Assembly: GCF_044704955.1 (NCBI RefSeq)
Contig: NC_091999.1
Location: 9,920,001-9,984,000 of the forward strand
Reading direction: 5' to 3'
DNA: 64,000 bases
Source of the DNA: Pristiophorus japonicus
Lineage: Eukaryota
The position numbers and the translations under genes are program-made. The number at the start of each line of letters is the position of its first letter. The first letter of the stretch is position 1. The notes below the pieces were generated by a model that was not told where the DNA came from, did no database searches, and saw only the letters and a program-made list of their open reading frames with translations. Positions 15,597 through 64,000 of this stretch are shown here, piece after piece.

Positions 15597-15635
15597 GGTT
15601 TTTGTACGGCTCTCTCTGTGCTTTATATCATTGTG
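15597..15635 (-). other. 23-bp RSS
   Basis: Minus strand: CACAATG + 23 nt + ACAAAAACC. Confidence 0.9.
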
Positions 15636-15780
15636 GTGTGAGCCGCCTCAGTGCACAGTAATACATAGCGAAGTCACTCAGTTGCAGTTTTGCAATGGTT
15701 AACCAGCTGATCTTCTTGGCAGGATCAATAGAAGCAGAAATTCGGCAACCGGCGACGTTTTCTTCATTCCCCTCTCCTGT
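15636..15780 (-). pseudogene. 3' half of a NAR-TCR supporting-type V-delta, truncated by a LINE
   Basis: GEGNEENVAGCRISASIDPAKKISWLTIAKLQLSDFAMYYCALRRLT, a close paralogue of 50166-50460. The 5' half is replaced by a LINE. Confidence 0.85.
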
Positions 15781-16995: not shown

Positions 16996-19900
16996 AAACA
17001 TAGAAACATAGAAAATAGGTGCAGGAGCAGGCCATTCAGCCCTTCTCGCCTGCACCGCCATTCAATGAGTTCATGGCTAAACATGCAACTTCAGTACCCC
17101 CTTCCTACTTTCACGCCATACCCCTTGATCCCCCGAGTAGTAAGAACTTCATCTAACTCCCTTTTGAATATATTTAGTGAATTGGCCTCAACTACTTTCT
17201 GTGGTAGAGAATTCCACAGGTTCACCACTCTCTGGGTGAAGAAGTTTCTCCTTATCTCGGTCCTAAATGGCTTACCCCTTATCCTTAGATTGTGACCTCT
17301 GGTTCTGGACTTCCCCAACATTGGGAACATTCTTCCTGCATCCAACTTGTCCAAACCCGTCAGAATTTTAAACGTTTCTATGAGGTCCCCTCTCACTCTT
17401 CTGAACTCTAGTGAATACAAGCCCAGTTGATCCAGTCTTTCTTGATAGGTCAGTCACACCATCCCGGGAGTCAGTCTGGTGAATCCTCGCTGCACTCCCT
17501 CAATAGCAAGAATGTTCTTCCTCAAGTTAGGAGACCATAACTGTACCCAATACTCCAGGTGTGGCCTCACCAAGGCCCTGTACAACTGTAGCAACACCTC
17601 CCTGCCCCTGTATTCAAATCCCCTCGCTATGAAGGCCAACATGCCATTTGCTTTCTTAACCGCCTGCTGTACCTGCATGCCAACCTTCAATGACTGATGT
17701 ACCATGACACCCAGGTCTCGTTGCACCTTCCCTTTTCCTAATCTGTCACCATTCAGATAATAGTCTGTCTCTCTGTTTTTACCACCAAAGTGGATAACCT
17801 CACATTTATCCACATTATACTTCATCTGCCACGCATTTGCCCACTCACCTTACCTATCCAAGTCACTCTGCAGCCTCATAGCATCCTCCTCGCAGCTCAC
17901 ACTGCCACCCAACTTAGTGTCATCCGCAAATTTGGAGATACTACATTTAATCCCCTCGTCTAAATCATTAATGTACAATGTAAACAACTGGGGCCCCAGC
18001 ACAGAACCCTGCGGTACCCCACTAGTCACTGCCTGCCATTCCGAAAAGTCCCCATTTACTCCTACTCTTTGCTTCCTGTCTGACAACCAGTTCTCAATCC
18101 ACGTCAGCACACTACCCCCAATCCCATGTGCTTTAACTTTGCACATTAATCTCCTGTGTGGGACCTTGTCGAAAGCCTTCTGTAAGTCCAAATATACCAC
18201 ATCAACTGGTACTCCTTTGTCCACTTTATTGGAAACATCCTCAAAAAATTCCAGAAGATTTGTCAAGCATGATCTCCCTTCCACAAATCCATGCTGACTT
18301 GGACCTATCATGTCACCATTTTCCAAATGCGCTGCTATGACATCCTTAATAATTGATTCCATCATTTTACCCACTACTGATGTCAGGCTGACCGGTCTAT
18401 AATTCCCTGCTTTCTCTCTCCCTCCTCTTTTAAAAAGTGAGGTTACATTGGCTACCCTCCACTCGATAGGAACTGATCCAGAGTCAATGGAATGTTGGAA
18501 AATGAATGTCAATGCATCCGCTATTTCCAAGGCCACCTCCTTAAGTACTCTGGGATGCAGTCCATTAGGCCCTGGGGATTTATCGGCCTTCAATCCCATC
18601 AATTTCCCCAACACAATTTCCCGACTAATAAAGATTTCCCTCAGTTCCTCCTCATTACTAGACCCTCTGACCACTTTTATATCCGAAAGTTTGTTTGTGT
18701 CCTCCTTAGTGAATACTGAACCAAAGTACTTGTTCAATTGGTCTGCCATTTCTTTGTTCCCCGTTATGACTTCCCCTGATTCTGACTGCAGGGGACCTAC
18801 GTTTGTCTTTACTAACCTTTTTCTCTTTACATACGTATAGAAACTTTTGCAATCCGCCTTAATGTTCCCTGCAAGCTTCTTCTCGTACTCCATTTTCCCT
18901 GCCCGAATCAAACGCTTTGTCCTCCTCTGCTGAGTTCTAAATTTCTCCCAGTCCCCAGGTTCGCTGCTATTTCTGGCCAATTTGTATGCCATTTCCTTGG
19001 CTTTAATACTATCCCTGATTTCCCTAGATGGCCACGGTTGAGCCACCTTCCCTTTTTTATTTTTACGCCAGACAGGAATGTACAATTGTTGTAATTCATC
19101 CATGCGGTCTCTAAATGTCTGCCATTGCCCATCCACAGTCAACCCCTTAAGTATCATTAGCCAATCTATCTTAGCCAATTCATGCCTCATACCTTCAAAG
19201 TTACCCTTCTTTAAGTTCTGGACCATGGTCTCTGAATTAACTGTTTCATTCTCCATCCTAATGCAGAATTCCACCATATTATGGTCACTCTTCCCCAAGG
19301 GGCCTCGCACAATGAGATTGCTAATTAATCCTCTCTCATTACACAACACCCAGTCTAAGATGGCCTCCACTCTAGTTGGTTCCTCGACATATTGGTCTAG
19401 AAAACCATCCCTTATGCACTCCAGGAAATCCTCCTCCATCGTATTGCTTCCAGTTTGGCTGGCCCAATCTATGTGCATATTAAAGTCACCCATTATAACT
19501 GCTGAACCTTTATTGCATGCACTCCTAATTTCCTGTTTGATGCCCTCCCCAACATCACTACTACTGTTTGGAGAACTGTACACAACTCCCACTAACGATT
19601 TTTGACCTTTAGTGTTCTGCAGCTCTACCCATATAGATTCCACATCATCCAAGCTAATGTCTTTCCTAACTATTGCATTAATCTCCTCTTTAACCAGCAA
19701 TGCTACCCCACCTCCTTTTCCTTTTATTCTACCCTTCCTGAATGTTGAATACCCCTGGATGTTGAGTTCCCAGCCCTGATCATCCTGGAGCCACGTCTCT
19801 GTAATCCCAATCACATCATATTTGTTAACATCTATTTGCACTGTTAATTCATCCACCTTATTGCGGATACTCATTGCATTAAGACACAAAACCTTCAGGC

Positions 19901-34193: not shown

Positions 34194-34410
34194 AGCTTTT
34201 GTACAAGAGGAGAACTAGGTCATATCACTGTGCCGGAGCGGTAGGGCAGAATCACACATGTACAGTCACGTGGCACTCAGGTGGAGATCAGTGATGGTTA
34301 AATTAGTCAACTTTGAGGAAGTAATTAATTCAGAAGTGAAGCGATTCCAAATATGTGTTGGCTTTTCCCCGACTCTCACTCAAAGTATTGTTTGAAAGTT
34401 AATTGTCGGC
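34194..34410 (-). pseudogene. V pseudogene 3' fragment with an intact 23-RSS
   Basis: NRFTSELITSSKLTNLTITDLHLSAT*LYMC..., then CACAGTG (34232-34226) + 23 + ACAAAAGCT. Confidence 0.75.
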
Positions 34411-39347: not shown

Positions 39348-39870
39348 TCTCTCAGCCCACAGTAATAAACCGCGCTGTCAGACAACTGCAGGCCGCTGAT
39401 GTTGAAATTTCCCTCACTTTTAGCAGCATCGAGAGATGCAGAAAATCGAACCCCCACGCCCTCTGCTCTGAAAACATCCCCAGCAGATGGGATGACGATT
39501 AAGATTGTGGGGCCTTTCTCCCGGTCCTGACGGTACAGTTGTAAGGAATAGTAAGTAGAAGTGGTCGAATAGCTGTAATTAATTGTCACCGAGTCTCCTT
39601 CAAACTGAATCGCATTATTTGGCCCCTGTGAGATCGAGTCTGCACCACTAACACCTGCAGAAATTTAGAAATACAGAAGTTTATCCTATTATAATCATTT
39701 CATTATAACAATATCATAACGGTGAAAGAATACATTACAAATAGAAAAACAGTTGAAATGAACAGTCTCTACTTTCGTGACACCTGCACGATGAAGCGTG
39801 TGTAACTTGTAAACTTACCAGTTAAGAGAGCTGCAGCTGTGACAAATGAATAAAATGAAACAAAAGACAT
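39348..39870 (-). CDS. TCR alpha/delta V segment, open frame but Cys23->Tyr and Trp41->Leu (leader 39870-39819, V 39654-39348)
   Basis: Leader MSFVSFYSFVTAAALLT with GTAAGT donor; CTGCAG acceptor. DSISQGP...VTINYSYST...LQLYRQD...LSDSAVYYCGLR. Confidence 0.9.
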
Positions 39871-44914: not shown

Positions 44915-46702
44915 AAACAACGTCCCAGAAATTCTAGGGAACCAATGGTCTAATGAGCAAGAGGAATTAAAGGAAATTATTATTAGTAAAAAAATAGTGC
45001 TGGGGAAACTAATAGGACAGAAAGCCGATAAATCCGCAGGGTCTGATGATCTGTCACCCAGAGTACTAAAAGTGGTAACCATGGAAATAGTAGATGCATT
45101 GGTGGTCATCTTCTAAAATTCTGTAGATTATGGAACAGTTCCCGCAGATTCGAGGGTGGCAAATGTAACCCAGGTATTTAAAAAAGGAGGGAGGGAGAAA
45201 ACTGGGAACTACAGTCCGGGTAGCCTAACATCAATAGCAGGAATGGGGTACTGAAATTGCATGTTCAGCCATGAACTGATTGAATGGCGGTGCAGGCTAG
45301 AAGGGCCGAATGGCCTACTCCTGCACTTATTTTCTATGTTTCTATGTTTTCTATGTTTCTAATAGTAGGGAATATGCTAGAGTCTATTATAAAGAATGTG
45401 ATAATGGCACACTTAGAAAATATCAACGGGATTAAACAAATTCAACATGGATTTATGAAAGGAAAATCATGTTTGACAAAGCTACTGGAATGTTTTGAGT
45501 ATGTAACTGATCGAATAGATAAGGGAGAACCAGTATTTGGCTGTATTTGGATTTTCAGAAGGCCTTTGATAAATTTCCACGTAAGAGATTAGTGTGCAAA
45601 ATTAAAGCACATAGGATTGAGGTAATGTATTGACATGGATTGTTGATTTGTTAACTGACAGCAAACGGAGAGTAGGAATAAATGGGTCTTTTTCGGGGTG
45701 GCGCGCAGTGACTAGTGGGACATCACAGGGATCAGTGCTTGCGCCCCAACTATTCACAATATATATAAATGATTTGGATGCGGGAGCCAAAGGTAACAGT
45801 TCCACGTTTGCTGACAACAGAAAACTAGGTGGGATTGGGTGTTGCAAGGAAGATTCAAAGATACTGCGAGGCGATGTAAATAGGTTGAGTGAGTGGGAAA
45901 ACACATGGCTGGTACAATATAACGTGTAGAAATATGAACTGATCCACTTTGTTAGGAAAAACATAAGGACAAAGTATTATTTAAATGGTAATGGCTGGGA
46001 CGTGTTGATGTACAGAGGGACCTGATGTCCTTGTACACCAGTCAGTGAAAGCAAGCATTCAGGTGCAGCAAGCAGTTAGGAAGAAACACCGTATGTTGGC
46101 CTTCATTGCAAGAGGATTTGAGTACAGGAGCAAGGATGTCTTACTACAATTAGGCAGGGCCTTGGTGAGACAACACCTGGAGTACTGTGTGCAGTTTGGG
46201 TCTCTTTACCTAAGAAAGGATATACTTGCCATAGAGAGAGTGCAGCGAAGGTTCACCAGTCTGATGCCTGGAATAGCAGGACTGTCGTCTGAGGAGAGAT
46301 TGAGTAGACTAGCTTGTATTCACTAGAGATTAGAAGAATGAGAGGGGATCTAATTGAAACGTATAAAATTCTGATTGGATTGGATAGACTGGATGCGGGG
46401 GTGGGCGGGGGGACGCTTCCCCTGGCTGGGAAGTCTTAAACAAGGGGTCACAGTCTCAGAATACGGTGACGAAAATTTAAGACCGAAATGAGGAGAAATT
46501 GTTTCGCTCAGAGTGTGGTGAACCTGTGGAATTCTCTACAACAGAAGGCTGTCTAGAAACAAAAGAAATCAAGGAGTATGGGGAAAAAGCAGGAATATGG
46601 TGTTCAGATAGAGGTTCAGACACGATCATATTGAATGGCAGTGCAGACTCCAAAGGCTGAATGGCTTACTACTGCTCCTATTTGCTATGTTTCTATGTTT
46701 CT
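44915..46702 (+). mobile_element. CR1 LINE, 5' truncated (extra tail inserted at about 45235-45360)
   Basis: QHGFMKGKSCLT, FADNRKL, (TTTCTATG) tail. Confidence 0.88.
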
Positions 46703-47009
46703 AACGCCGGTCAGATGCAGAGCAAAGCACCTTTCATGCTGCCCCGCAAAAAGTTTTGACGTCAGATACAGCATAGGTTAAATGAAATGTAAATTCAGAT
46801 TTACTGTGTTCCAGTAGACACTCAAGCATTGAGTTCAGAATGTGTAAATCTTCTATACTGTCGCCAAAATGACTCATCGGTAAGTATAGCGCCAGTTAGA
46901 TACAGAGTAAATTTCTGTCTATACATTCCCAACAAACAATCCCAGAGCAGATACAGCACGGGTTAGATGCAGAGTAAAGCTCTCTCTACACATTCCCATG
47001 AAACACTCC

Positions 47010-49950
47010 CAGAGTGTTGTTGGAGGTTTGTTAGTGGTGGAGGGAAATCATGTTCAACGTGGTGGATAGTGTGTCAATGAAGCGGGTTGCTTTGTCCTGG
47101 ATGGTGTCGAGCTTCTTGAGTGTTGTTGGAGCTGCACTCATCCAGGCAAGTGGAGAGTACTCCATCGCACTCCTGACTTGTGCCTTTTAGATGGTGCGAA
47201 GGCCTTGGGTTATGAAGAGGTGAGGCACTCGCCGCAGAATACGAAACCTCTCACCAGCTCTTATTGCCAAATTATTTATGTGACAGGTCCAAATAAGTTT
47301 CTGGTCAATAATGATCCCCAGGATTATGATGCTGGGTGATTCGGCGATGGTAATGCCATTCAATTTCAAGGGGTGGTGGTTATACTCTCGCGTGTTGGAG
47401 ATATCATTACCTGGCACTTTTGTGGCCCGAATATTAAATGCCATTTAACAGCCCAAGCCTGAATGTTGTCCAGGGCATTTCATTATCTGAGGAGTTTCGA
47501 ATGGCATTGAATACCGTGCAGTCAACATTAAACATCGACACTTGGTAACTTACGATGGAGGGAAAGTATTTCATGAAATAGCTGCAGATGGTTGGGCCTA
47601 GCACATCATCATGAAGAAATCCTGCAACGATGTCCTGGAGCTATGATGATTGCCTTCCAACTCCCACAACAATATTCCTTTGAACGAGGTATGCCTTCAG
47701 CGAGTGGAGCGCCCACCCCCTACCACCCCCCTGCTGATTTCCATTGACTTCAGTTTTACTATGGCTCCTTGAAGTCATGCTTGTTCAAATACTGTCTTGA
47801 TTTCAAGGGCAGTCAATCTCATCTCACCTCTGGAATTCAGCTCTTTTGTCCATGTTTGGTTCAAGGCTGTAATGAGGTCTGGAATGGAGTGTTCCTGGCA
47901 GAACCCAAACTGAGCATCGGTGAGCAGGTTATTGGAGAGTGTCGCTTGATAGCACTGATGACGACACTTTCCATCACTTAGCTGATGATTGAGAGTAGAC
48001 TGGTGGGGCGTTAATTGGCCGTATTGTATTCGTCCTGCTTTTTGTGGACATGACTAGGCAGTTTTCCACATTATTGGTAGATGCTCGGAACAGCATGGCT
48101 AGAGGCGTGGTTCGTTCTGGAACAGGTCTTCAGTATGACAGCCAGATTGTTATCGGGGCCCATAGCATTTGTTGTATCCAGTGTGCTCAGCCTTTTCTTG
48201 ATATCACATGAAGTGAAGTGAATTGGCTGACGATTGGCTTATGCGACAGTGGGGGCCTCAGCAGGATGCCGATATGGATCATCCACTCGGCACTTCTGGC
48301 TGAAGATAGTTGCAAACGCTTCAGCCTTTTCAGTTGCACTCACGTGCTGGACTCTGTCATCATTGAGGATTGGGATATTCACGGAGCCTCCTGCTCCAGT
48401 TACTTGTTTAATGTTCCACAACTATTCACTACTGGATGTGGCAGGACTGCAGAGCTTTGATCTGATCCGTTGATTGTTGGATCGCTTAGCTCTGGTATGG
48501 TATGCTGTTTCTGCTTTTTAGCAGGAATGCAGTCCCGTGTTGCAGTTTCCACAGGTGAAAACCTTAATTTTAGCTAAGCCCGGTGCTGCTCTTAACATTC
48601 TCTTTAATTCTCATCATTGAACCAAGGTTGGTCACCTGACTTGATGATATTGACAGTGTGAGAGATATGCCGGGCCATGAGGTGAAAGGATCTGCTGCTG
48701 ATGATATCCATAGCGCCTCATGGATGAACAGTTTTGAGCTGCAAGATCTGTACTGAATCTGTGCCATTTAGCGTAGTTTCTCCACAATCGAGGTATGATG
48801 GTCAATGCTACCAATGCTGTCATGCGCAGATGCAATTGCGACAAATAGATTGGTGAGGACGTGGTAAAGTAGATTTTTTCGTAGAGTTGGTTCTCTCACC
48901 ACCTGATGCAGGACCAATCTGGCAGCTATGCGTTTCAGGACTTCATCAGCTCTGTCAGTAGTGGTGTTCCCGAGGCACTCTCAGTGGTTTATATTGAAAT
49001 ACCCCACACAGAGTATATCTGATCAAGAAAGTTCTCTTAAAAATATTTTGAAATTCTTCCTCCTCTCTGCCGTTTAATATTACTATGCCAATCTAAACTA
49101 GAATAACTCAAGGCCCCCATTATGACTTCTCTATAGTTGTTGCACATCTCTTTAATTTCCCTAAAAAATGCCCCTCTCTATATGCTTCCCATTAATTAGC
49201 GCCGAGTGAATGCATCTCACAATGTAATGGCACGGCTATTAGTTCTTAACTCGAAACCAACATATTCTATCCTTGACCCATCCAGGAGATCCTCTCTCTT
49301 CATCACTGTAACATTCTCCTGAACCAATACTGCCAGCGCAATACCTTTCTTTCCATCACTATCTTCCTGAACAATTTATATCCAGGAATTTTTAATAACC
49401 AATCCTGTTCTTTTGTCAGCCAGGTCTCCTTTACCCCATGATATCATATTCCCACGTGGCTATTTGCACCTGCAGCTCACCAACCTCATTTACCATGCGT
49501 CGTGCGTTGACACACAAGCACTGTGAATCTCCATCAGACATTCTTATATTTTCTCTTCATCTGCCCCCACCAAATACCTTACCATTTCTTATTCTAGTGC
49601 TATCTGTCTTCTGTATTCTAATGGTACATCCTGTTGCCCACCCCTCTGCGGAATTAGTTTAAATCTTCCCGCCAACAGCAGGAGCAAATCCTCCCCCCTC
49701 CGCCCCCCCACCTCCCCCCGATCACGAGATCCAGCCTGTACAGGTCGAAATTATCCTAAAAGCCATCCCAATGTTCCAAGAATCTAAAGTCTCCCTCCTG
49801 CACCATTTCTGCATTCACGCATTAATCTGCTCTCTGCTACTATTGCTATCGTCACAAGATTGTGGCACCGGGAGTAATCCTGAAATTATTACCTTTGAAG
49901 TCCTGCTTTTAAATCTCTTTCTTTGTTGCGAATATCTGCTTACAGGAACT
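47010..49950 (-). mobile_element. CR1/L2-group LINE (47010-49020) plus old CR1 EN/ORF1 fragments
   Basis: KAEAFATIFSQKCRVDD; homologous to 7900-8860. Confidence 0.7.
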
Positions 49951-50008
49951 CATCAATTTTTCTACCATGATCAGGTTTTTTAACGGCTCTCTTCGTGCTC
50001 TGTATCAT

Positions 50009-50155
50009 AGACATAGAAACATAGAAAATAGGTGCAGGAGTAGGCCATTCGGCCCTTCTAGACTGCACCGCCATTCAATGAGTTCATGGCTGAACATGCA
50101 ACCTCAGTACCCCATTCCTGCTTTCGACCATACCCCTTGATCCCCCTAGTAGTAA
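50009..50155 (-). mobile_element. CR1 3' tail inserted into an RSS, flanked by a TATCAT duplication
   Basis: TATCAT at 50003-50008 and 50156-50161 flank a (CATAGAAA)n tail fragment. Confidence 0.85.
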
Positions 50156-50165
50156 TATCATTGTG

Positions 50166-50460
50166 GTGTGAGCCGACTCAGTGCATAGTAACACTTAGCG
50201 GAGTCCTTCAGTTGCAGTTTTGCGATGATTAACTGGCTGATTTTCTTTGCAGGATCAATAGAAGCAGAAATTCGGCCACCAGCAGCGTTTTTTTTATTCG
50301 CCTCTCCTGAAGTATGTCTCTGAAACAACTATTTCGGAGCCTGACCTGGGGACTGATTGTACCAGTGTAGTCTGTACTGACATATCCCTTAATATTCGCA
50401 GCTTAAAGTTACGGTTTCACCTGCAGCAGAGATTTGTAGAGGACACCGAGAAACTGGAAT
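50166..50460 (-). pseudogene. NAR-TCR supporting V-delta (leaderless, CDR1 Cys), pseudogene
   Basis: The acceptor CTGCAG|AT lies directly at the mature N-terminus. VTLSCEY*GICQYRLHWYNQSPGQAPK*...ISASIDPAKK...LQLKDSAKCYYALSR, with two stops and a frameshift. Heptamer CACAATG at 50165-50159. Confidence 0.85.
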
Positions 50461-53004
50461 CTGCAGATTTAAAGCGGGAGATTGTTACTTATTTGGCTGC
50501 TGTGTACCTGGGGACACTTATCAATCAGAAGACTGGCCCAGCCACTCGCGGCTATGTGCTTCTTCATTTGAAGCCTGTTCGAACAATATTCACTGTAATG
50601 AGCAAACGGTGGGAGGGCGCGCTGAGTAGAAATTTATTTACGCAGTCAGCCGTTATGACCTGGAAATACACAGCCTGAAAGGATGGTGGGAGCAGATACA
50701 ATCATAACTTTTAACAGGAAATGTTATAAATACTGGAAAAGGAACATTTGGCAGGCTATGGGGAAAGTTCGGGACGAGTGGGAATAATTGAATTGTTCCC
50801 TCAAAAAGCCAGCACAGACAAGATGGGCCGAATGGCCTCCTTCTCTGTGGTATGATTCCATGATTTCTATTAAAGTTGTGTTTCTATTATTCTTGGTCAA
50901 AGACAAACCCGAACAAAATAACAGTCCGTTCTCCTCACTGAGATAACAACATTCCAATGATGTTTGACCGAGAGTAACCCAGCTGTGTTATATCTCTGCA
51001 CACAGCAAGATGCAGCAGAAAACAATGAGATTCATCAGCTCCAATTCATCCGAGCTGACTCTGTAAACGTTCGGGTCAAAGGTCAGACTTTTACTGCAGT
51101 TTAACATTCATGGGAGCTCCTGTCGGCCGCTCGCTCTATTTGTCTCTATTCTTCCATCATGGGGACCCCCTTTGCTCGAATTCACTTTAATTTGAATTAT
51201 TTACTGTCTGTTTCATTTTATATCTTCATCTAGGTCACTCACTTTGTGCTATTTGTGGTATTTCTTCAGGCTGAGAACCTGTCGCACAGTCTCTCAGTTG
51301 TCGGTTGGGTTCAGTCTGTGCAGTTTCCACAGTGATTTTACTGTTACTCGCTGGCAACTGGCTGTTCCGGCTCTCTGGCAATTTCAATTCCGTCAGCCCA
51401 TTGACTGATTCTCTCCAATTTACTCCAGGGGGAGTTTTCTCTCAATTTTACATCATACAGAACCTGCAGAAAAGGTTCAGTCTAATTGATCTGAGCCGAT
51501 GTTCATATTCTACAATAGCATCCTCCGACTCCAATTACCTCGTCCCACACAGAAACCTGTGCCCTTCCATTCCTTTCTCCCTCGTATATTTTTCAAGACT
51601 CAATTTAAACGCATCAACGCTAGCTGCTCCAACCACTCCATGGGGCAGCGCATTGCCCATTCTGACGTATCTCTGTGTAAATAAATGCTTCCTAATGTCT
51701 TTATTTGTTCTGTTAGTGACTATTGTATATTTGTGACCCCTTGTCCTGGACTCATCCACGATGGAAATAGTTTCTCCACGTGGTTCTAAATGGACTTTTC
51801 TCCGGTCTGTACTTGTTACCTCCGGAGTTCCCGTTCTCTTCTCCTCTGTAAGAAGAATAGAACTTCGCTCTCACTCGCTCACTGCCCAGTGTTATTTCCA
51901 TTAATAGTAGCCAGGCATACAGGTAAATCGCTGCAATCCAATCTCTCAAATATGAATATTAAATATTACATAGAATTAAATAGCACATGCAGAGTAAAAA
52001 CAGGCCATTTGCCCCCACCAGTCCATGCCGACGTTTATGACCCTCACGAGCCTGCTCCCATACTAATTTACCTCACCCTATTAGAGTATCCTTCTATACC
52101 TTTCTCCCAAATGTGCTTATCGCGCTTCCCATTAAAGTAATTAATACTGTCCAAACTCTCCCTGTGGTAGCGAGATCCACATTCTCACGACTCTCTAAGT
52201 AGCTAAGTTTCTGCTGAATTCCCTATTAGATTGTTTATAAATAGGAAACAATTACAGCGTCTGCAGTTAGAAACTATTACATTCCCACTTAAACGGGAAA
52301 GGAGGAGGGATAATGATTGTTTACATAAAAGCAATTGGAATAAATGTGAGATACAATACAACTAATTTCAGTCACTGAGTGTCCAAATATGAAATGCATT
52401 CTAGACCTACAATCGGATCTCTTGTATCCCCGCCATGCTGTGCTCCAGTTTGTTTGCTCAATGGAGATATCGGTTGGACCACTGCAGGTATCTGATAGGC
52501 CACTGTAGTGTTGCGATGAATCTCCCGGTTCCTCGTTCACACTGCGTGGAATCACCTGCCCAGGAAGGAACTCAACGATCCCTTCGCCTCCTCAAATGGA
52601 CACGCAGAGCTCCCTCAGTCACAGTTAAACGCAAGAGCGGAGGCCGCAGTGTCGTTAATCTGCGCTCATTTAAACCAGTTGTGGTTCAGAGTGAGAGGCC
52701 GGGATGTTCGATGGGATCGCCAGAGCAGCCCGTAAACCAATGATGGTCCAGATGGGGCCAACTCCCACCCCACGCCAGACTGCCTGTTTCGTGGGATTTC
52801 ACATCTCCTCTCTCCGGACTTACATCTGGACATGGCCTGGTTCATATGCTGCAGGCGAATCTACAACTGTAATGAACCACCCCTTTAGAAAACCGCTCTG
52901 TTTTACTTTGAAGGGGATTGACATGATAACGATCACAATACTAAACTGATGGTGAACATTAACTGGGACAGTGTGTAACACCGGCAGGATTTGGAGGCAC
53001 TTAC

Positions 53005-53107
53005 CAGCTGTGACAGTTACCATCGTCGCGGATCCTTCCACAGAACCAAAAACCCACCCACCATCCACCACAGTGAAAGTGCTCCCAATCACTCCTGTAC
53101 AAGAACC
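53005..53107 (-). other. NAR-TCR-type J segment (53068-53005) with 5' 23-RSS (53107-53069)
   Basis: GGTTCTTGT + 23 + CACTGTG, then VDGGWVFGSVEGSATMVTVTA and a phase-1 G|GTAAGT donor. Confidence 0.88.
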
Positions 53108-53415
53108 ACTGACATCTCACTTTGCCGGCGCCACATCAGCAGTCATTCGCCGCTGCCCAATTATTCTAGGGATCAATAAACAATAACCCATAATTCAAAG
53201 TCCCCGTCGGATCAAAATGTTCTTCATGAGAGCTCTGAATAAAATGACCCAGGTACACGGGCCAGTGATGGGTGCTCATATAAACAGAGAAAATATCAAA
53301 GAAAGATAATGAATAGCGGGGAATTACAATACAAATAAATCAGATTATAATGATAATAAGATCAAACCGACAATTCAGGTTTCGGCCCGGAGCATTTATG
53401 TTTTAATTGCACACA

Positions 53416-53443
53416 GGTATTTGCTCAGATTTCTTCCACTGTG
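53416..53443 (-). other. 12-bp RSS 3' of the NAR V
   Basis: CACAGTG + GAAGAAATCTGA (12 nt) + GCAAATACC; there is no nonamer at the 23-nt position. Confidence 0.85.
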
Positions 53444-53915
53444 AGGTCCTGGTAGTCAGCTTTACAGTAATAGGTGGCACTGTCTTCAACTCGCAGATCC
53501 CCAATGTTCAGCCAAAATGTATTTTCTACGTTATTCGTCCTCACATGAAGTCGTCCTCTGCTCGAGATCCGCCCCCGCTCTGTCCTGATCTGGGTTTGTC
53601 TGAAGACATGGCCATATTTAAATAATCCAATGAATCACCACAGTAAATGCAGATGATGGTGAGTAACTGGCAATCCTTCCTGGTCATCGCTGGCGGGGAC
53701 TGCGTCACTGAACGACTGAAAGAGGGTGGAAATTAAATAGATAGAGTTTAATGGGCTATCTGAGCCGAACCGCATAACGGGGCTAAAAGGCAGACAGTGT
53801 GCACAATTCGGATGGAGACGGGCAGTTTTATATTAAATACACATAATATGGATTTGTTTGAAAAGTACTCATAGGGTAAACAGACACACTGGCTGAAAAT
53901 AAGGCGTATTCCCAT
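53444..53915 (-). pseudogene. IgNAR-like (NAR-TCR) V pseudogene (leader 53915-53873, V about 53725-53444)
   Basis: SVTQSPPAMTRKDCQLLTIICIYCGD, frameshift, then YGHVFRQTQ...RISSRGRLHVRTNNVENTFWLNIGDLRVEDSATYYCKA. It has the short VNAR FR2-CDR2 deletion and an FR1 Cys. Leader MGIRLIFSQCVCLP has its donor mutated to AT; TATA-like motif at about 53941-53947. Confidence 0.87.
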
Positions 53916-55899
53916 CGTTCTGCTACCTGGAGCTGATGGCTTATATGACAGGGAACTGGAGACTGAAGTCCCAGACTGCTCTGGGAGGCTGTATCTCAGC
54001 GCTGGACTGAGATACTTTGGATGATCGAGTTAATTAGCACAGTGCAGTGCCCCGGAGATCATTGATCCTTCGCAAGCTCCGCGAATCTCTGGCTGTGTGT
54101 TGCGTGAATAACCCACAGGTTTAAAGATTAACCTGCGTTACATTGGGTCTCTGAGCCCGAGTTAAAGGCCCCTCCCACATTAGTTTAATGTATAGGGGGG
54201 AGTTATTCTGTCATCAGAGGACGCTGTCTGCCTTTGTCCAAGAGTTAATGAGCTGAGAGGCCAGTTCATGTGTTTTATTGGGTGGTGTTTGTTGAGGGTG
54301 GAATGTGGTCGCAGAACACCGGGAGAGGCCTCACTCTTAATGCAATATTGCCGGGGATTTTTTAACCTACTCTGAACGGGCTGGCGGGACCTTGGTTAAA
54401 TGTTTGATCGAAGGACTGTGCATAAAACCCTGCACCAATCCCTCAGTCCAACGACTGGATGTCAGTTTCGAACATGAGACATCCCAGTGACATTTTCAAC
54501 ATACAGGGAGATACATACAATACATACAAGTAATAAACTCTCCCTAAACAAATACTTCCTGAATCATCCCCTTCTGTGTTTTGCATTTAAAATTGTATTT
54601 CAATTAAGTATTGATTTGTTTTAGATCTGTAATATTCTGAGTTGCGAGTTGCAGTGACAGAGAATGAAGCGACACTCGGAAGGTCAATGGACATTGGGAC
54701 AACTCTGTGCGTGTGGGTTGTTTTAAAGAGCACCATCACTACTTCATGAAATCTGTTCATTGTCTGTGAACTCTCTCTGACCCAGCTCTGATCAAATAAA
54801 CCCTGTGTACAGGCCGCGATCAAAGGGTCCGGGAGACTGATAAGGAATTTGTGTGAATGGCTGCACAATATTGCAGGCACGGAAAGGGCATAAAAGAACA
54901 ACAGGGCCACAGATGGATTGTACTTCAGAAAAACATGACGAAAAAATTGTCACATAAACATGGCCGACAGTACATAGCACAGAGATAGCAGACAAAACGT
55001 CACATAATAATGGCCGACTGTACATCACACGAGCATTGCCGACTGTGCATAATACAAATATGGCCGACAGCAAGTCCCATAAAGAGAGATGACTAATTGT
55101 CACATAAACATGGCCGACTGTAATTAAGACAATCATGGCGGTGGTTTGACCTGCAGTGGATGATGCCACAAAGCTTTCCGCACGTCACGCTAGTTACTCA
55201 CAGATTTTTAATGTTAAGGGTTGTTTTTCTCGCAGTATTTTCTATTTAACTTTCGAGTCACCCACTGATGGTGTTAGACAGAGGCTGGAATCCCGCAACG
55301 CCGGTTGTGCTGCAGCAGGGTCAGAATGTCCATCAGGTTCTCGAACTCGCATCCACTTAAGAGTAACATCTGAAAAGAACACACACAAAGTATTTGCTTC
55401 ATATGTGTGTGTGTGTGCGTGTGTGTATGTGTATGCGTGTGTGTCGGGGGGGGGCGGTGCGCATCAAACACAACATTCTTAATGTGTGCAAATGCATTCT
55501 ACAAAGATAAATTATGATTGTCACCAATTATGTTTCAGCATTTCATGTTTTTGCTCAACATCTGATGCAGATCTTTTAATATCTTTAACATTTATTGATG
55601 ACACCGTTTTCTTGAATGCTCTTGGTGACAAAGAGACGTCACGCTGACCATTCCTTTACTAAGGCAAGCCTGTCTGTCCAAAGTATTCAGTTCGAAAGGG
55701 GATTAAATCAAACAGAAGGTAGTGAGCAGCTACGCAGCAGTCTCTGCGTCTCATTGTCATATGATCACCTCAGCATCACACAGAAGTTTCTGATATACAC
55801 TGCAAGTGCATCATGCTTTGTGAAACTTAAGGTAAAAAAAGAAAATGTAGGTATACATGACATGCTTCTAAAATGTCCACATTGCAATATATGTGCGCA

Positions 55900-56169: not shown

Positions 56170-56700
56170 GACAAGTTACCGTATGGTTGAGATATAGAGT
56201 AAAGCTCCCTCTAAAATTTCCCGTCAATCACTCCCAGACCAGGTACAGCACGGGGTTAGATACAGAGTAATGCTCCCGCTGCACTGTCTCATCAAATCCT
56301 ACAGTGCAGGTACAGCACAGTTTAAATAGAGAGTACAGCCCCATGTACACTGTCCCATCAAACACTCCCAGGGAAAGTACAGCACGGGTTATATACAGAG
56401 TAAAGCTCCCTGTACACTGTCCCATCAAACACTCCCAGGGCAGGTAAAGCACGGGTGACCACAGAGTAAAGCTTCCTCTACACTGTCCCATCAAACGCTC
56501 CCAGGGCAGGTATAGCACAGTTTAGACACCGAGTAATGCTCTCTCTACACTATCCTATCAAACACTCCCAGGGCAGGTACAGCACTGGGTTAGATACAGA
56601 ATAAAGCTCCCTCTACACTGTCCCATCAAACACTCCCAGGGCAGGTACAGCATGGGTTAGATACAGAGTAAAGCTTCCTCTGCACGGTTCCATCAAGTTT
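56170..56700. repeat. ~62-bp tandem repeat array, about 8 copies
   Basis: Unit CACTCCCAGGGCAGGTACAGCACGGGTTAGATACAGAGTAAAGCTCCCTCTACACTGTCCCATCAAA. Confidence 0.9.
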
Positions 56701-57163
56701 CCATTGGCACGGGCCAATTCGCGATATTAACTGTTTTAATAGACTACTCTCCTAATTCTATTGGTAATTGCACTGACTAAACCCTTTGGTTCCCGAGGTG
56801 ATGTACTTAATGGCAAGCTAGATGATTCCAGGTGGGAAAAGGAATGGAAGGATATGTAATTAGGGTCGGATGAGATAAGTTGGATGAGGCTCCTGTGGAC
56901 CATAAACACCAGCATTGGCCAATTGGGCCGAATGGTCTATTTCTTTGATGTAAATTCTAAATGATTGTGCAATCGAACTCTTCAAGCGGCCAGACAGAAG
57001 GACTGCACCCCCTCTGCTCCAGGCTGGATAACCGGACAGGTCACAAATGGGAAAAGGGAATCCTTTAAAATTGAGCGCAAAGACATTTCTCTCACTTCTA
57101 ACCGCTGGTTTCATTGTCTCTGGAATTTCCAGTTAATTGAACTTTATTGTAACCGTTCTTCAG

Positions 57164-57560
57164 CGAAACACCCGCAGGAACGGTCTGTCTCTGTCCTCCT
57201 TTCCTCGGCAGAAGAATTCTCTGCTCAGAGGAACGTCACCCTCACCTGTTTAATGAAAGATTTCTCCGCCCCCCCACCCCCGAGAGATCTTCATCAAATG
57301 GAGCGTCAATCACAAGCCGGTGGATTCCGTCAACTACAAGAACACCGAGGTGATGGTGGAGAACGGCAGCAGCTCCTTCTTCATGTACAACCTGTGATCC
57401 ATTGCAGCGGACGAGTGGGCCAGCGGCGCTTCTTACTCCTGTGTGGACATGAAGCGATGGCCTTGAAGATGATCAACAAACGGTTAATAAATCCAGCTCA
57501 AAACCGAGATTAGTAAACATTATCTTGTTCTGATGGACACCCTCAATTATTAACAATTAG
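57164..57560 (+). pseudogene. IGHM: IgM heavy-chain C-mu4 plus secretory tail, pseudo-exon
   Basis: [33 protein letters not shown]...[11 protein letters not shown]...SIAADEWASGASYSCV..HEAM.LKMIN...NKSS.KP..VNI.LVLMDT matches shark C-mu4. It carries frameshifts and a stop; AATAAA at 57600-57605. Confidence 0.92.
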
Positions 57561-61058: not shown

Positions 61059-61485
61059 ATGTCCCGAATAAAGTCATGTGATTGAGTACTGTAGATGTGA
61101 GTAAGTGTGAGCTTAGTCTCTTTATTGTAACTCCAGAGTGCTGCTACAGCATGGGAGGTCTGTTTATATACAGTGCTCCGAAGGGATGTTGGGACCCCTT
61201 GGGACTCCAAAAGATACGCCCTCTGGTGGCGGTAGACTGCTAGTTACATAGGGTTGCATACATAATATCACTCCCTCCCAAAGTCAATAGTACATTTATT
61301 TACAGAGTGAGACGATCTTGGGCTTTTCGCTCCCTAGTCAATCGTCTCAGTACAAGTGCAGGTGCAGGTGAGTTGGTTGGTTCTTCACTGGGCTGCTCCG
61401 TGGCTGGCCTTGTTAGGCTGCGGGGCTGATGAGTTCAGCTTCGCGGTCAACCGTGATGTCAGTTGCCACTTGTGTGTGTGTCGGA
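61059..61485 (-). mobile_element. Probable Gypsy LTR plus adjacent internal 3' end
   Basis: A TG...CA-bounded unit of about 210 bp, adjoined by CTCCCTCCC (a polypurine tract on the minus strand). Confidence 0.5.
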
Positions 61486-61489
61486 GGAA

Positions 61490-63045
61490 CGAAGAGGTGG
61501 CCTTGGAATTAGCGGATGCATTGACAATAATTTTCCAACATTCCATAGGCTCTGGATCAGTTCCTATCGAGTGGAGGGTAGCCAATGTAACCCCACTTTT
61601 TAAAAAAGGAGTTAGAGAGAAAACAGGGAATTATAGATCGGTCAGCCTGACCTCAGTAGTGGGTAAAATGATGGAATCAATTATTAAGGATGTCATAGCA
61701 GCGCATTTGGAAAGAGGTGACATGATAGGTCCAAGTCAGCATGGATTTGTGAAAGGGAAATCATGCTTGACAAATCTTTTGGAATTTTTTGAGGATGTTT
61801 CCAGTAGAGTGGACAAGGGAGAACCAGTTGAGGTGGTGTATTTGGACTTTCAGAAGGCTTTCGACAAGGCCCCACACAAGAGATTAATGTGCAAAGTTAA
61901 AGCACCATGGGATTAGGGGTAGTGTGCTGACATGGATTGAGAACTGGTTGTCAGACAGGAAGCAAAGAGTAGGAGTAAAGGGGTACTTGTCAGAATGGCA
62001 GGCAGTGAATAGTGGGGTATCGCAAGGTTCTGTGCTGGGGCCCCAGCTGTTTACAATGTACATTAATGATTTAGACGAAGGGATTAAATTTAGTATCTCC
62101 AAATTTGCGGATGACACTAAGTTGGGTGGCAGTGTGAGCTGCGAGGAGGATACTATGAGGCTGCAGAGTGACTTGGATAGGTTAGGTGAGTGGGCAAATG
62201 CATGGCAGATGAAAAATATAATGTGGATAAATGTGAGGTTATCCACTTTGGTGGCAAAATCAGAGAGACAGACTATTATCTGAATGGTGACAGATTAGGA
62301 AAAGGGGAGGTGCAACGAGACCTGGGTGTCATGGTACATCAGTCATTGAAGGTTGGCATGCAGGTACAGCAGGCGGTTAAGAAAGCAAATGGCATGTTGG
62401 CCTTCATACCGAGGGGATTTGAGTACAGGGGCAGGGAGGTGTTGCTACAGTTGTACAGGGCCTTGATGAGGCCACATCTGGAGTATTGTGTACAGTTTTG
62501 GTCTCCTAACTTGAGGAAGGACATTCTTGCTATTGAGGGAGTGCAGCGAAGGTTCACCGGATTGATTCCCGGGATGGCGGGACTGACCTATCAAGAAAGA
62601 ATGGATCAACTGGGCTTATATTCACTGGAGTTCAGAAGAATGAGAGGGGATCTCATAGAAACGTTTGAAATTCTGATGGGTTCAGACAGGTTAGATGCAG
62701 GAAGAATGTTCCCAATGTTGGGGAAGTCCAAAACCAGGGGTAACAGTCTAAGGATAAGGGGTAAGCTATTTAGGACTGAGATGAGAAGAAGCCTCTTCAC
62801 CCAGAGAGTGGTGAACCTGTGGAATTCTTACCACAGAAAGTTGTATAGGCCAATTCACTAAATATATTCAAAAAGGAGTTAGATGAAGTCCTTACTACTA
62901 GCGGGTTCAAGGTGTATGGCGAGAAAGCAGGAATGGGGTACTGAAGTTGCATGTTCAGCCATGAACTCATTGAATGGCGGAGCAGGCTAGAAGGGCCCAA
63001 TGGCCTACTCCTGCACCTATATTCTATGTTTCTATGTTTCTATGA
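61490..63045 (+). mobile_element. CR1 LINE 3' half
   Basis: RT motifs including FADDTKL; (TTCTATGT)n tail. Confidence 0.92.
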
Positions 63046-64000
63046 TTTCCCTTTCATAAATCCATACTGACTTGGACCGATCCTGCACTGCTTTCCAAAT
63101 GCGCTGCTATTTCATCTTTAATAATTGATGGCAACATTTTCCCCACTACTGATGTCAGGCTAACGTTCTATAATTCCCCGTTTTCTCTCTCGCTCCTTTC
63201 TTAAAAAGTGGTGTTACATTAGCTACCCTCCAGTCCATAGGAACTGATCCATAGTCGATATACTGCTGGAAAATCATCACCAATGCATCCACCATTTCTA
63301 GGGCCACTTCCTTAAGTACTCTGGAATGCAGACTATCAGGCCCTGGGAATTTATCGGTCTTCAATCCCATCAGTTACCCGAACACAATTTCCTGACTTAT
63401 AAGGATTTCCTTCTGTATCTCATTCTCACTAGACCCTCGGTCCCCTAGTATTTCTGGAAGGTTATTTTTGTCTTCTTTCATGAAGACAGAACCAAAGTAT
63501 TTTTTGAACTGGTCTGCCATTTCTTTGTTCCCCATTATAAATTCACCTGATTCTGACTGCAAGGGACCTACGTTTGTCTTCACTAATCTTTTTCGCTTCA
63601 CATATCTATCGAAGCGTTTGCAGTCAGTTTTTATATTCCCAGCAAGCTTCCTCTCAAACTCTATTTTCCCCCTCCGAATGAAACCATTCGTTCTCCTCTG
63701 CTGAATTCTAAATTTCTCCCAGTCCTCAGGTTTCCTGCTTTTTTTGGCCAATTTATATGCCTCTTCCTTGGATTTAACACTATCCCTAATTTCCCTCTAT
63801 GAGCCGAAGTTGAGCGACCTTCCCTGTTTTATTTTTACTCCAGACCGGGATGTACAATTGTTGAAGTTCATCCATGTGACCGTTAAATGTTTTCCATTGC
63901 CTATCCACCGTCACCACTTTCAGTATCGTTCACCAGTTTATTCTAGCCAATTCACGTCTCATAGCATCGAAGTTACCTTTCCCTAATTCAAGGCCCTACT
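63045..64000 (-). mobile_element. CR1 ORF2 fragment
   Basis: [17 protein letters not shown]; KFPGPDSLHSRVLKE. Confidence 0.9.

What the first reader, a model, noticed from the sequence alone, without database searches (positions are those of the whole stretch)
50159..53950. Complete NAR-TCR (double-V TCR delta) cassette, fossilised
Seen in order on the minus strand: TATA and leader, VNAR-type V, J with a phase-1 donor, and a V-delta whose acceptor sits right at D-S-V with no leader remnant. The NAR V has an extra FR1 Cys (RKDCQ) and the supporting V has a CDR1 Cys (GICQY). Known: shark NAR-TCR chains splice NAR V(D)J onto a leaderless V-delta, and this Cys pair is proposed to form an interdomain disulfide. 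The NAR V also has a CDR1 Cys (CIYC) and lacks Trp41. The J ends TMVTVTA, as in shark IgM JH, with EGSAT replacing WGxGT. Both V domains and both leader splice sites have decayed, while the J and its RSS look intact.
Basis: partly seen in the sequence, partly recalled or inferred. Interest (0 to 1): 0.78.

Follow-up and report, generated by a model that had tools for sequence, protein, structure and literature searches.

The report
Dead D-less shark NAR-TCR cassette
This is a broken, non-functional copy of the two-variable-domain "NAR-TCR" gene unit that sharks and their relatives build into their T-cell receptor delta locus; it belongs to a known family, and its one unusual trait is that it has no D segment between V and J.

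Summary
On the minus strand, in order, lie:
- a leader-like exon;
- a short Ig-type V exon with a heptamer-12-nonamer signal;
- a J with a nonamer-23-heptamer signal and a phase-1 GT donor;
- a 2.5 kb repeat-laden intron;
- a TCR V exon that starts too close to its first cysteine to hold a leader part.

The upstream V has the published NAR-TcR V marks. It has a Cys in the a-b loop, no Trp at the WYRK position, and a Cys-Cys span of 61-62 residues. Neighbouring TCR Vs span 68-72 and a VH spans 74. The downstream V has the CDR1 Cys of "supporting" V-deltas.

The cassette is dead:
- The leader donor reads AT.
- The NAR V has a frameshift.
- The V-delta has two stops, a lost canonical Cys, and a recombination signal cut off by a repeat three to four bases after the heptamer.

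- The acceptor reads D-S-S-F-S-V and is out of frame with the V body.
- The J lacks an (F/W)GxG motif.
- No D exists. The V carries five extra codons and a 12-spacer signal, which fits a germline VD join.

No phylogeny or RNA test was possible. This scan has already noted other NAR-TCR cassettes elsewhere in this genome.

The parts
53941..53947 (-). TATA-like motif about 30 nt upstream of the leader ATG
   Evidence: Read directly. No test of promoter function was made.
53873..53915 (-). Leader-like exon: an ATG, 14 codons with a short hydrophobic core, plus 1 nt (phase 1). The donor position 53872-53871 reads AT where GT is expected, followed by GAGT.
   Evidence: It has the same layout as the leader exons of three conventional Vs in the window, which have 13-17 codons plus 1 nt and a GT donor. 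The scan found no usable GT donor for this exon.
53444..53715 (-). NAR-type V exon, a pseudogene. Landmarks: AG acceptor at 53717-53716; a-b loop Cys at 53672-53670; first framework Cys at 53651-53649; extra CDR1 Cys at 53642-53640; Met at the Trp position at 53609-53607; frameshift near 53565-53557; second framework Cys at 53466-53464; then K-A plus five further codons.
   Evidence: Translations. Pfam V-set E 2.1e-5 for the FR3 piece. hhalign against the window's TCR Vs gives 93% for FR3 and E 0.013, in register, for FR1. The Cys-to-Cys distance is 185 nt, or 61-62 codons. The exon start lies only 65 nt (counting the carried-over nt) before the first Cys and is out of phase with the leader (my count).
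53416..53443 (-). V-side recombination signal: heptamer 53443-53437, 12-nt spacer, nonamer 53424-53416
   Evidence: Scores 14 of 16. All six TCR Vs of the window carry 23-spacer signals instead.
53069..53107 (-). J-side recombination signal: nonamer 53107-53099, 23-nt spacer, heptamer 53075-53069
   Evidence: Scores 15 of 16. Between the V and J signals no further heptamer/nonamer pair reaches 11 of 16.
53005..53068 (-). J segment: 21 open codons ending TMVTVTA plus one G, then the donor GTAAGT (53004 onward), phase 1. The (F/W)GxG motif is not intact.
   Evidence: A PDB search of the 21 residues found no antibody or TCR J (2 hits, both unrelated proteins).
50461..53004 (-). Intron between J and V-delta, 2,544 nt, carrying interspersed repeats (about 51976-52243, 51440-51707, 50636-50903)
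   Evidence: Depth is hundreds to tens of thousands of times the baseline in those bins in all four runs. None of the 6 minus-strand ORFs tested has an Ig-domain hit.
50166..50460 (-). Leaderless supporting-type V-delta exon, a pseudogene. Landmarks: acceptor AG at 50462-50461; first Cys at 50400-50398; stop at 50391-50389; CDR1 Cys at 50382-50380; stop at 50331-50329; Tyr in place of the second Cys at 50187-50185, with a new Cys two codons earlier.
   Evidence: Translations. The paralogue at 15.6 kb keeps YYC. The exon start is 20 1/3 codons (18 for the alternative AG) before the first Cys. All 3 open conventional V exons have 26. None of the 4 conventional Vs has a CDR1 Cys.
50159..50165 (-). 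Heptamer CACAATG of the V-delta. The spacer and nonamer are gone.
   Evidence: Alignment with the 15.6 kb paralogue, which has heptamer-23-nonamer at 15 of 16, ends 3-4 nt after the heptamer. From about 50156 downward the sequence is an interspersed repeat with 10 further copies in the window and very high depth.

Best explanation
This is a decayed copy of a NAR-TCR double-V cassette lying in the V array of a cartilaginous-fish TCR alpha/delta locus.

How a working cassette operates (partly from paper passages, partly recalled):
- A promoter and leader drive a short, antibody-like NAR V that is assembled by its own V(D)J recombination.
- The J has a phase-1 splice donor. It is spliced to a V-delta exon that has no leader of its own.
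- That V-delta exon separately rearranges to the delta D, J and C segments.
- One delta chain therefore carries two V domains. A Cys in the a-b loop of the NAR V and a Cys in CDR1 of the supporting V are proposed to link the two domains.

Why this copy cannot do that (shown in the sequence):
- The leader donor reads AT.
- The V exon start is out of phase with the leader.
- The NAR V has a frameshift.
- The J lacks the (F/W)GxG motif.
- The V-delta is shifted by one base behind its acceptor.
- The V-delta has two stop codons and has lost its second framework Cys.
- A repeat has replaced the V-delta recombination signal three to four bases after the heptamer.

The missing D (inferred): the cassette has no D segment. 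Its V ends with five extra codons and a 12-spacer signal that faces the 23-spacer signal of the J. The likeliest cause is that V and D were joined in the germline by RAG, as is known for shark Ig clusters. The D's 3' signal was then left on the fused VD.
For: Order and strand of the parts.

Signals:
- The V signal scores 14 of 16 and the J signal 15 of 16.
- The window has 7 signals at 14 of 16 or better, against 0 in each of 20 shuffles.

The upstream V is a V domain:
- FR3 matches Pfam V-set at E 2.1e-5.
- FR3 matches a profile of local TCR Vs at 93%.

The upstream V is of NAR type:
- Its Cys-to-Cys distance is 61-62 codons. Local TCR Vs have 71, 68, 72 and 72. A llama VH-type nanobody has 74 (residue numbers).
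- The missing residues lie between the first Cys and the G-R motif of FR3. That is the FR2-CDR2 deletion described for vNAR (PMC4622739 passages).
- It has the a-b loop Cys and no Trp of WYRK, as published for NAR-TcR V of nurse shark and elephant shark (PMC1845163 passages).
- It carries a 12-spacer signal, whereas all six TCR Vs in the window carry 23-spacer signals.

The downstream V is of supporting type:
- It has a CDR1 Cys. None of the 4 conventional Vs has one.
- Its exon starts 18 or 20 1/3 codons before the first Cys. All 3 conventional exons start 26 codons before theirs.
- No usable leader exists. The candidate at 50705 lies in repeated DNA. The candidate at 50567 is not hydrophobic and has no phase-1 donor at leader length.

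Not an Ig cluster: no C-domain remnant lies between the J and the V-delta. None of the 6 ORFs tested has an Ig-domain hit.

Lesions. They are reproduced in DNA contigs with no differences.

Germline VD-J joins in cartilaginous-fish Ig clusters are described in passages of PMC4279169 and PMC5192425.
Against: - No named NAR-TcR, IgNAR or supporting V-delta sequence could be retrieved. Three word-index searches and one full HMMER search were all blank. The grouping therefore rests on diagnostic features, not on a tree.
- The FR1-to-HV2 piece is not recognised as an Ig domain by Pfam. Its 9 PDB matches are weak (E 0.61-4.6): 7 are TCR alpha chains and 2 are antibodies.
- The FR3 piece scores best against VH domains in the PDB. 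That listing is swamped by multi-domain antibody constructs and cannot rank single IgNAR domains.
- In a pseudogene, the absence of the Trp and the extra Cys residues could be decay rather than family marks.
- The V exon start lies almost at the mature N-terminus and out of phase, so the leader-to-V splice cannot be reconstructed.
- No RNA evidence exists. Runs X5-X7 cover only repeats, and their kind is not on record.
- The VD-join idea has no direct support, because no intact paralogue could be aligned.
- The papers that define the cassette (Criscitiello 2006, Deiss 2019, Ott 2021) are not held.
Confidence: 0.85

Rival explanations
1. The V and J are the stump of an Ig heavy-chain minicluster (IgM, IgW or IgNAR type) that lost its constant exons. 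The V-delta downstream is an unrelated TCR V pseudogene that merely lies next to it.
For: - The signals follow heavy-chain logic, with a J-side 23-spacer.
- FR3 scores best against VH domains in the PDB.
- A last-C-domain-like Ig heavy-chain relic lies 3.5 kb away at 56965-57513.
Against: - The Ig C relic is on the opposite strand and upstream of the V.
- None of the 6 ORFs in the 2.5 kb after the J shows an Ig domain.
- The next Ig domain on the same strand is a V that has exactly the two published marks of a supporting V-delta, namely no leader part and a CDR1 Cys.
- The V is 12-13 residues too short for a VH and lacks its Trp.
Confidence: 0.07
2. The D segment was lost by an ordinary deletion, or this lineage of cassettes never had one (a V-J type). 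Under this reading, the 12-spacer signal on the V is original and not inherited from a D.
For: - No D-type signal lies between V and J.
- The 12/23 pairing would allow direct V-to-J joining.
- Nothing in the window shows a junction scar.
Against: - The V runs seven codons past its Cys. Five conventional Vs here run three codons past theirs, which leaves room for D-derived sequence.
- An unchecked first-reader note on another window of this genome (s1-874874) describes an intact NAR cassette with V22, 12-D-12 and 23-J. Under that layout, only a V-D fusion puts a 12-spacer signal on the V.
- Germline VD-J joins are known in shark Ig clusters.
Confidence: 0.3
3. The upstream V is a conventional TCR alpha/delta V pseudogene, or an IgH-like TCR-delta-associated V (TAILV/VH-delta type), with an internal deletion. 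The J-like stretch is a chance signal.
For: - The weak PDB matches of the FR1 piece are mostly TCR alpha chains (7 of 9).
- The locus is full of TCR Vs on both strands.
Against: - It has a 12-spacer signal, whereas all six TCR Vs here have 23-spacer signals.
- It ends YYCKA, not the CAL/CGL/CVL endings of the local TCR Vs.
- A 15-of-16 signal, an open frame and a consensus phase-1 donor sit 370 nt downstream. Such signals are absent from shuffles.
- The V is single-copy in the window and has no DNA likeness to the other Vs.
Confidence: 0.04

Closest known systems
NAR-TcR (NARTCR) doubly rearranging TCR delta genes of cartilaginous fish (Criscitiello, Saltis and Flajnik 2006). The paper was not held; I saw only other papers' passages.
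   Same: - A NAR-type V with a leader, an a-b loop Cys and no Trp of WYRK.
- Its own J.
- A downstream V-delta without a leader and with a CDR1 Cys.
- A location among TCR alpha/delta V genes.
   Different: - There is no D between V and J, whereas the literature describes VDJ rearrangement of both V domains.
- The V carries a 12-spacer signal and five extra codons.
- Every coding part except the J frame is broken.
- The V-delta signal is truncated by a repeat.
IgNAR V clusters (V-D1-D2-D3-J-C) and the vNAR domain
   Same: - A short V domain with the FR2-CDR2 region deleted (passages of PMC4622739).
- An extra Cys in CDR1.
- Heavy-chain-type signal logic on the J side.
   Different: - A V-delta exon follows it, not constant exons.
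- It has an a-b loop Cys and lacks the conserved Trp.
- There are no D segments.
Germline-joined (VD-J, VDJ) Ig clusters of cartilaginous fish
   Same: A V with extra codons carries the signal expected of a D's 3' side and faces an unrearranged J. Passages of PMC4279169 and PMC5192425 describe VD-J joins attributed to RAG activity in germ cells.
   Different: - Here the unit sits in a TCR locus cassette, not an Ig cluster.
- The join is inferred, not shown.
- Papers found by my four searches of the held library were read only as passages, and none of those passages mentions a germline-joined NAR-TcR V. The key papers and all supplements were not seen.
TCR mu of marsupials and monotremes
   Same: A TCR chain with two V domains: an antibody-like N-terminal V on a supporting V. 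In marsupials the supporting V is germline-joined (passages of PMC3457774).
   Different: It arose independently, uses VH-related V genes, and sits in a separate locus in clusters.
TAILV / VH-delta (IgH-like V segments in TCR delta loci)
   Same: An antibody-like V embedded among TCR alpha/delta V genes (PMC12227049 passage).
   Different: As I recall it, those Vs join directly to TCR delta D and J segments. This V has its own J with a splice donor and a 12-spacer signal.

Membership tests
NAR-TcR cassette | The N-terminal V is of NAR type: a short V domain with the FR2-CDR2 region deleted. | tested here: met
   The Cys-to-Cys distance is 185 nt, or 61-62 codons. Local TCR Vs have 68-72, and a VH-type nanobody has 74 (residue numbers). 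The shortfall lies between the first Cys and the FR3 G-R motif. The feature is described in PMC4622739 passages.
NAR-TcR cassette | Cys in the a-b loop of the NAR V | tested here: met
   A Cys sits seven residues before the first framework Cys. The feature is stated in PMC1845163 passages.
NAR-TcR cassette | The NAR V lacks the canonical Trp of the WYRK motif. | tested here: met
   Met stands at the position 14 residues after the first Cys, and no Trp occurs in any part of the FR2 stretch. In a pseudogene this could also be decay.
NAR-TcR cassette | The NAR V has a typical leader. | tested here: inconclusive
   There is an ATG plus 14 codons plus 1 nt, as in local leader exons. However, the donor reads AT, the hydrophobic core is short, and the V exon start is out of phase.
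NAR-TcR cassette | The NAR V is assembled by V-D-J recombination, with D segment(s) between V and J. | tested here: not met
   No heptamer/nonamer pair reaches 11 of 16 between the V signal and the J signal. V(12) faces J(23) directly.
NAR-TcR cassette | The cassette has its own J with a splice donor in phase with the next V exon. | tested here: met
   It has a 15-of-16 signal, 21 open codons, and G|GTAAGT in phase 1. The (F/W)GxG motif is not intact, and no PDB J matched.
NAR-TcR cassette | A supporting V-delta lies downstream on the same strand and lacks a leader. | tested here: met
   Its exon starts 18 or 20 1/3 codons before the first Cys. All 3 conventional exons start 26 codons before theirs. 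Both upstream leader candidates were rejected.
NAR-TcR cassette | Conserved Cys in CDR1 of the supporting V-delta | tested here: met
   A Cys sits six residues after the first framework Cys. None of the 4 conventional Vs of the window has one. The feature is stated in PMC1845163 passages.
NAR-TcR cassette | The supporting V-delta keeps a working signal to rearrange to the delta D and J. | tested here: not met
   Only the heptamer remains. A repeat replaces the spacer and nonamer. The 15.6 kb paralogue keeps a 15-of-16 23-spacer signal.
NAR-TcR cassette | The V groups with NAR-TcR V in a phylogeny. | not testable with these tools
   No reference sequence could be fetched, and sequences from memory or from papers may not be typed.
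NAR-TcR cassette | Transcripts join J to the V-delta. | tested here: inconclusive
   No RNA run holds the stretch. Runs X5-X7 cover only repeats, in 7 of 30 bins.
IgNAR cluster | Constant-domain exons follow the J. | tested here: not met
   None of the 6 minus-strand ORFs in the 2.5 kb after the J has an Ig-domain hit. The next Ig domain is a TCR-type V.
TAILV / VH-delta | An IgH-like V of full VH length with a V-type 23-spacer signal and no J of its own (feature list recalled) | tested here: not met
   It has a 12-spacer signal, its own J 370 nt downstream, and a Cys-to-Cys distance of 61-62.

The most novel reading that the evidence does not exclude
The cassette records a germline V-to-D join by RAG inside a TCR locus. 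The NAR V would have fused to its D segment(s) in a germ cell and kept the D's 3' 12-spacer signal, so that it could then join its J in a single step. If so, the germline joining known from shark Ig clusters also acted on the NAR units of the TCR delta locus. Such a copy may once have encoded a restricted, semi-invariant NAR-TCR before it decayed.
Probability: 0.4. Interest if true: 0.45.

Novelty: new member of a known kind. Interest (0 to 1): 0.3.

Why it matters
The finding adds one annotated, dead copy to a receptor family known since 2006. This scan has already noted that family several times in this genome, both intact and decayed, so its value is mainly for annotating the locus.

Two points go a little beyond that:
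- It shows how these cassettes die. The damage includes point lesions in both V exons, a lost leader donor, and a repeat landing inside the V-delta recombination signal.
- Its D-less V(12)-J(23) layout, if it comes from a germline VD join, would extend a shark Ig peculiarity to the TCR delta locus. It would also bear on how NAR V units moved between TCR and Ig loci.

Tried and rejected
Searches that gave nothing:
- Word-index protein searches were blank for the FR1-HV2 piece, the FR3 piece and the FR3 of the 15.6 kb V-delta paralogue.
- The full HMMER search of 1.84 billion representatives with the FR1-HV2 piece found 0 proteins at E 0.001 or better.
- The protein atlas gave only a V-set lead for the FR3 piece (score 0.93-0.95) and nothing for FR1.

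PDB searches:
- The searches of the FR3 piece list only multi-domain antibody constructs, whose domain scores add up. They could not rank IgNAR against VH and were dropped as a classifier.
- The search of the J found no Ig or TCR J.

Ideas rejected:
- A second cassette near the 15.6 kb V-delta fragment. The J-like tblastn hits at 21.1-21.5 kb lie in a transposon-like stretch, and the V fragment has no upstream V sequence.
- A leader for the 50.3 kb V.
- C exons after the J.

Reads: no RNA holder exists. One laying of 4,001 letters showed only DNA contigs and repeats.

Papers: Criscitiello 2006, Ott 2021 and Deiss 2019 are not held. The details of the germline cassette are therefore taken from other papers' passages or recalled. 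Supplements are closed. Table S1 of PMC12227049, which holds the coordinates of NARTCR V genes, may bear on this locus.

Not done: I searched no spliced or read-through model. The leader and V, the two V pieces, and the J and V-delta were never joined in any tool.

Full report
**Setting.**
- The window is eukaryotic DNA with no N.
- It holds TCR alpha/delta-type V exons with heptamer-23-nonamer signals on both strands. The heptamers start at + 1602, + 31004, + 42221 and at - 40454, - 39347, - 15635.
- These came from a scan that listed 10 signals scoring 13 of 16 or better. Seven of them have a V-like Y-x-C tail just upstream.
- Two open V exons reach Pfam V-set at E 1.4e-14 and 1.7e-09.
- LINE reverse-transcriptase ORFs and interspersed repeats are frequent.
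- The locus reads as the V array of a cartilaginous-fish TCR alpha/delta locus. The species is coded in the read tools, and I did not identify it.

**The observation: upstream V.**
- On the minus strand a TATAA lies at 53945-53941.
- An ATG at 53915 opens 14 codons plus one base. This is the layout of the leader exons of three conventional Vs here, which have 13-17 codons plus 1 nt followed by GT.
- At the expected donor this copy reads AT followed by GAGT.
- After a pyrimidine run and an AG (53717-53716) comes a V exon.
- Its first 57 codons, up to a stop, are read in one frame. They hold a V-T-Q-S-P start, a Cys seven residues before the first framework Cys (RKDCQ), the framework Cys, a further Cys three residues on (CIYC), and Met where V domains have their Trp.
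- The FR3 lies in the neighbouring frame and ends YYCKA plus five more codons. There is therefore one frameshift near 53565-53557.
- The V exon starts only 65 nt, counting the carried-over base, before the first Cys, and it is out of phase with the leader. An AG eight bases further on is in phase. The leader-to-V splice cannot be reconstructed.

**The observation: signals and J.**
- The V signal is heptamer, 12 spacer, nonamer, scoring 14 of 16.
- 370 nt further on, a nonamer, 23 spacer and heptamer (15 of 16) precede 21 open codons that end TMVTVTA. A G and GTAAGT follow, giving a phase-1 donor.
- Signals scoring 14 of 16 or better number 7 in the window. None occurred in any of 20 mononucleotide shuffles.

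**The observation: downstream V.**
- The next Ig-type exon on this strand starts 2,544 nt after the J donor, behind an AG at 50462-50461.
- Read from that AG with the J's G, it begins D-S-S-F-S-V and hits a stop after 14 codons.
- The V body is in the frame, one base off. That frame holds the G-E-T-V-T-L-S-C of FR1, a stop, the CDR1 with GICQY, W-Y, a second stop, and an FR3 ending C-Y-Y-A-L where the paralogue at 15.6 kb has Y-Y-C-A-L.
- The heptamer CACAATG is at 50165-50159.
- Homology to the paralogue, which carries a 15-of-16 23-spacer signal, ends three to four bases after the heptamer.
- From there on the DNA is an interspersed repeat with 10 further copies in the window and very high depth in all four runs.

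**Is the upstream V a NAR-type V?**
- The FR3 piece is clearly a V-domain piece. It matches Pfam V-set at E 2.1e-5, 0.9 bit under the cut-off for a whole domain. It matches a profile of three local TCR Vs at 93% by hhalign.
- The FR1 piece aligns in register with that profile, but weakly (E 0.013, probability 3%).
- The FR1 piece gets no Pfam Ig hit. In the PDB it gets 9 weak hits (E 0.61-4.6), of which 7 are TCR alpha chains and 2 are antibodies.
- The decisive measurement is length. The two framework Cys codons are 185 nt apart, or 61-62 codons. The local TCR Vs have 71, 68, 72 and 72. A VH-type nanobody has 74 (Cys 22 and Cys 96, from the residue numbers).
- The alignments place the shortfall between the first Cys and the G-R motif that opens FR3. 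A review describes the vNAR fold as having 8 instead of 10 strands because of a deletion in the framework 2-CDR2 region (PMC4622739, passages).
[quoted passage not shown] All of these marks are present here.
- The V differs from every TCR V in the window in carrying a 12-spacer signal and in its C-K-A ending.

**Is the downstream V leaderless?**
- In all 3 open conventional V exons tested, an in-phase AG lies exactly 26 codons before the first Cys position. That leaves a short second leader part ahead of the mature start. A fourth V gave no candidate because a stop intervenes.
The next AG, which is in frame with the V body, lies 18 codons before it. Either way there is no room for a leader part.
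- A scan for ATG-started exons with phase-1 donors found two candidates upstream.
- The candidate at 50705 lies in repeated DNA. Depth there is about 6,000 against a baseline of 6-9, and a second copy lies at 33925.
- The candidate at 50567 is poorly hydrophobic and reaches a donor only after 26 codons.
- None of the 4 conventional Vs has a Cys in CDR1.

**What is missing or broken?**
- No D exists. Between the two signals, no other heptamer/nonamer pair reaches 11 of 16.
- The J is open, with a good signal and donor. But it reads E-G-S-A (or, four residues earlier, F-G-S-V) where a J has (F/W)-G-x-G, and its 21 residues match no antibody or TCR in the PDB. I cannot call it intact.
- Counting lesions:
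  - Upstream unit: the leader donor, the phase at the V exon start, and one frameshift.
  - V-delta: a one-base shift behind the acceptor, two stops, loss of the second Cys, and loss of the signal's spacer and nonamer.
- DNA contigs of run X1 tile 50128-54100 in six long pieces with no differences. The lesions are not consensus errors of the assembly, although X1 may be the source sample.
- Extra summed depth over both FR3 regions (bins 53450-53583 and 50234-50367) and two short contigs with six differences point to paralogues elsewhere in the genome.

**The D-less layout.**
- The J-side 23-spacer signal follows heavy-chain logic, not TCR logic. This fits the Ig-like origin of the unit.
- The V runs seven codons past its Cys. 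Five conventional Vs here run three codons past theirs.
- Cartilaginous-fish Ig clusters are often partly (VD-J) or fully joined in the germline. This is attributed to RAG expression in germ cells (PMC4279169 and PMC5192425, passages).
- A V-to-D coding join would remove the V signal and the D's 5' signal. It would leave the D's 3' 12-spacer signal on the fused VD, facing the J's 23-spacer signal. That is what is seen.
- An unchecked first-reader note on another window of this genome reports V22, 12-D-12 and 23-J for an intact NAR unit (s1-874874). This is a lead, not support.
- I put the VD join at about 0.4. An ordinary deletion or an originally D-less lineage is at about 0.3. The rest is undecided.
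- Another note on my own window had already stated this layout (s1-877985). I reached the same layout independently.

**Rivals.**
- An Ig minicluster stump next to an unrelated V-delta is made unlikely by three things. The 2.5 kb after the J holds no Ig domain (none of the 6 ORFs tested). The Ig C-like relic at 56965-57513 lies on the opposite strand. The next V has both supporting-V marks.
- A deleted TCR V or a VH-like V fails on signal type, length, ending and the adjacent J.

**What could not be done.**
- I could build no tree, because no reference sequence could be fetched.
- I found no RNA evidence.
- The defining papers were not held.
- Supplements were closed.

**Verdict.** This is a real but dead NAR-TCR double-V cassette. 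It belongs to a receptor kind known since 2006, which this scan has already met several times in this genome. The missing D is its only unusual trait.

Noticed in passing
window 56965-57513, + strand: A 182-aa ORF looks like the last constant domain of an Ig heavy chain. Pfam C1-set gives only E 0.082, and the best PDB hit is an Ig alpha heavy chain at E 0.013. It lies upstream of the NAR cassette on the opposite strand.
   Followed up: partly
window 34195-34290, + strand: An orphan nonamer-23-heptamer (14 of 16) is followed by a short open J-like stretch and a CAG|GT. No V-like ORF lies next to it. A 23-spacer J-side signal follows heavy-chain logic, so this may be a second Ig or NAR-type J relic.
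   Followed up: partly
window 15629-15779, - strand: A 3' fragment (FR3 plus a 15-of-16 23-spacer signal) of the same V-delta family as the 50.3 kb V. It is 87% identical over 151 nt and keeps YYC. Everything upstream of it is unrelated sequence.
   Followed up: yes
window 50000-50156 and ten other places (e.g. 62892-63046, 16998-17143, 45236-47347 region): An interspersed repeat family has 11 copies in the window. One copy abuts the V-delta heptamer and replaces its spacer and nonamer.
   Followed up: partly
window 39350-39643, - strand: An open TCR V exon with a perfect-looking 23-spacer signal and a leader has Tyr (TAC) in place of its first framework Cys.
   Followed up: no
window 56185-56696: A tandem array of a 67-bp unit, 7.6 copies at 81% matches, lies between the NAR cassette and the Ig C-like relic.
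   Followed up: no
window 61356-62861, + strand: LINE-type reverse-transcriptase ORFs. A similar tail fragment lies inside the intron between J and V-delta (51535-51759, minus strand).
   Followed up: no
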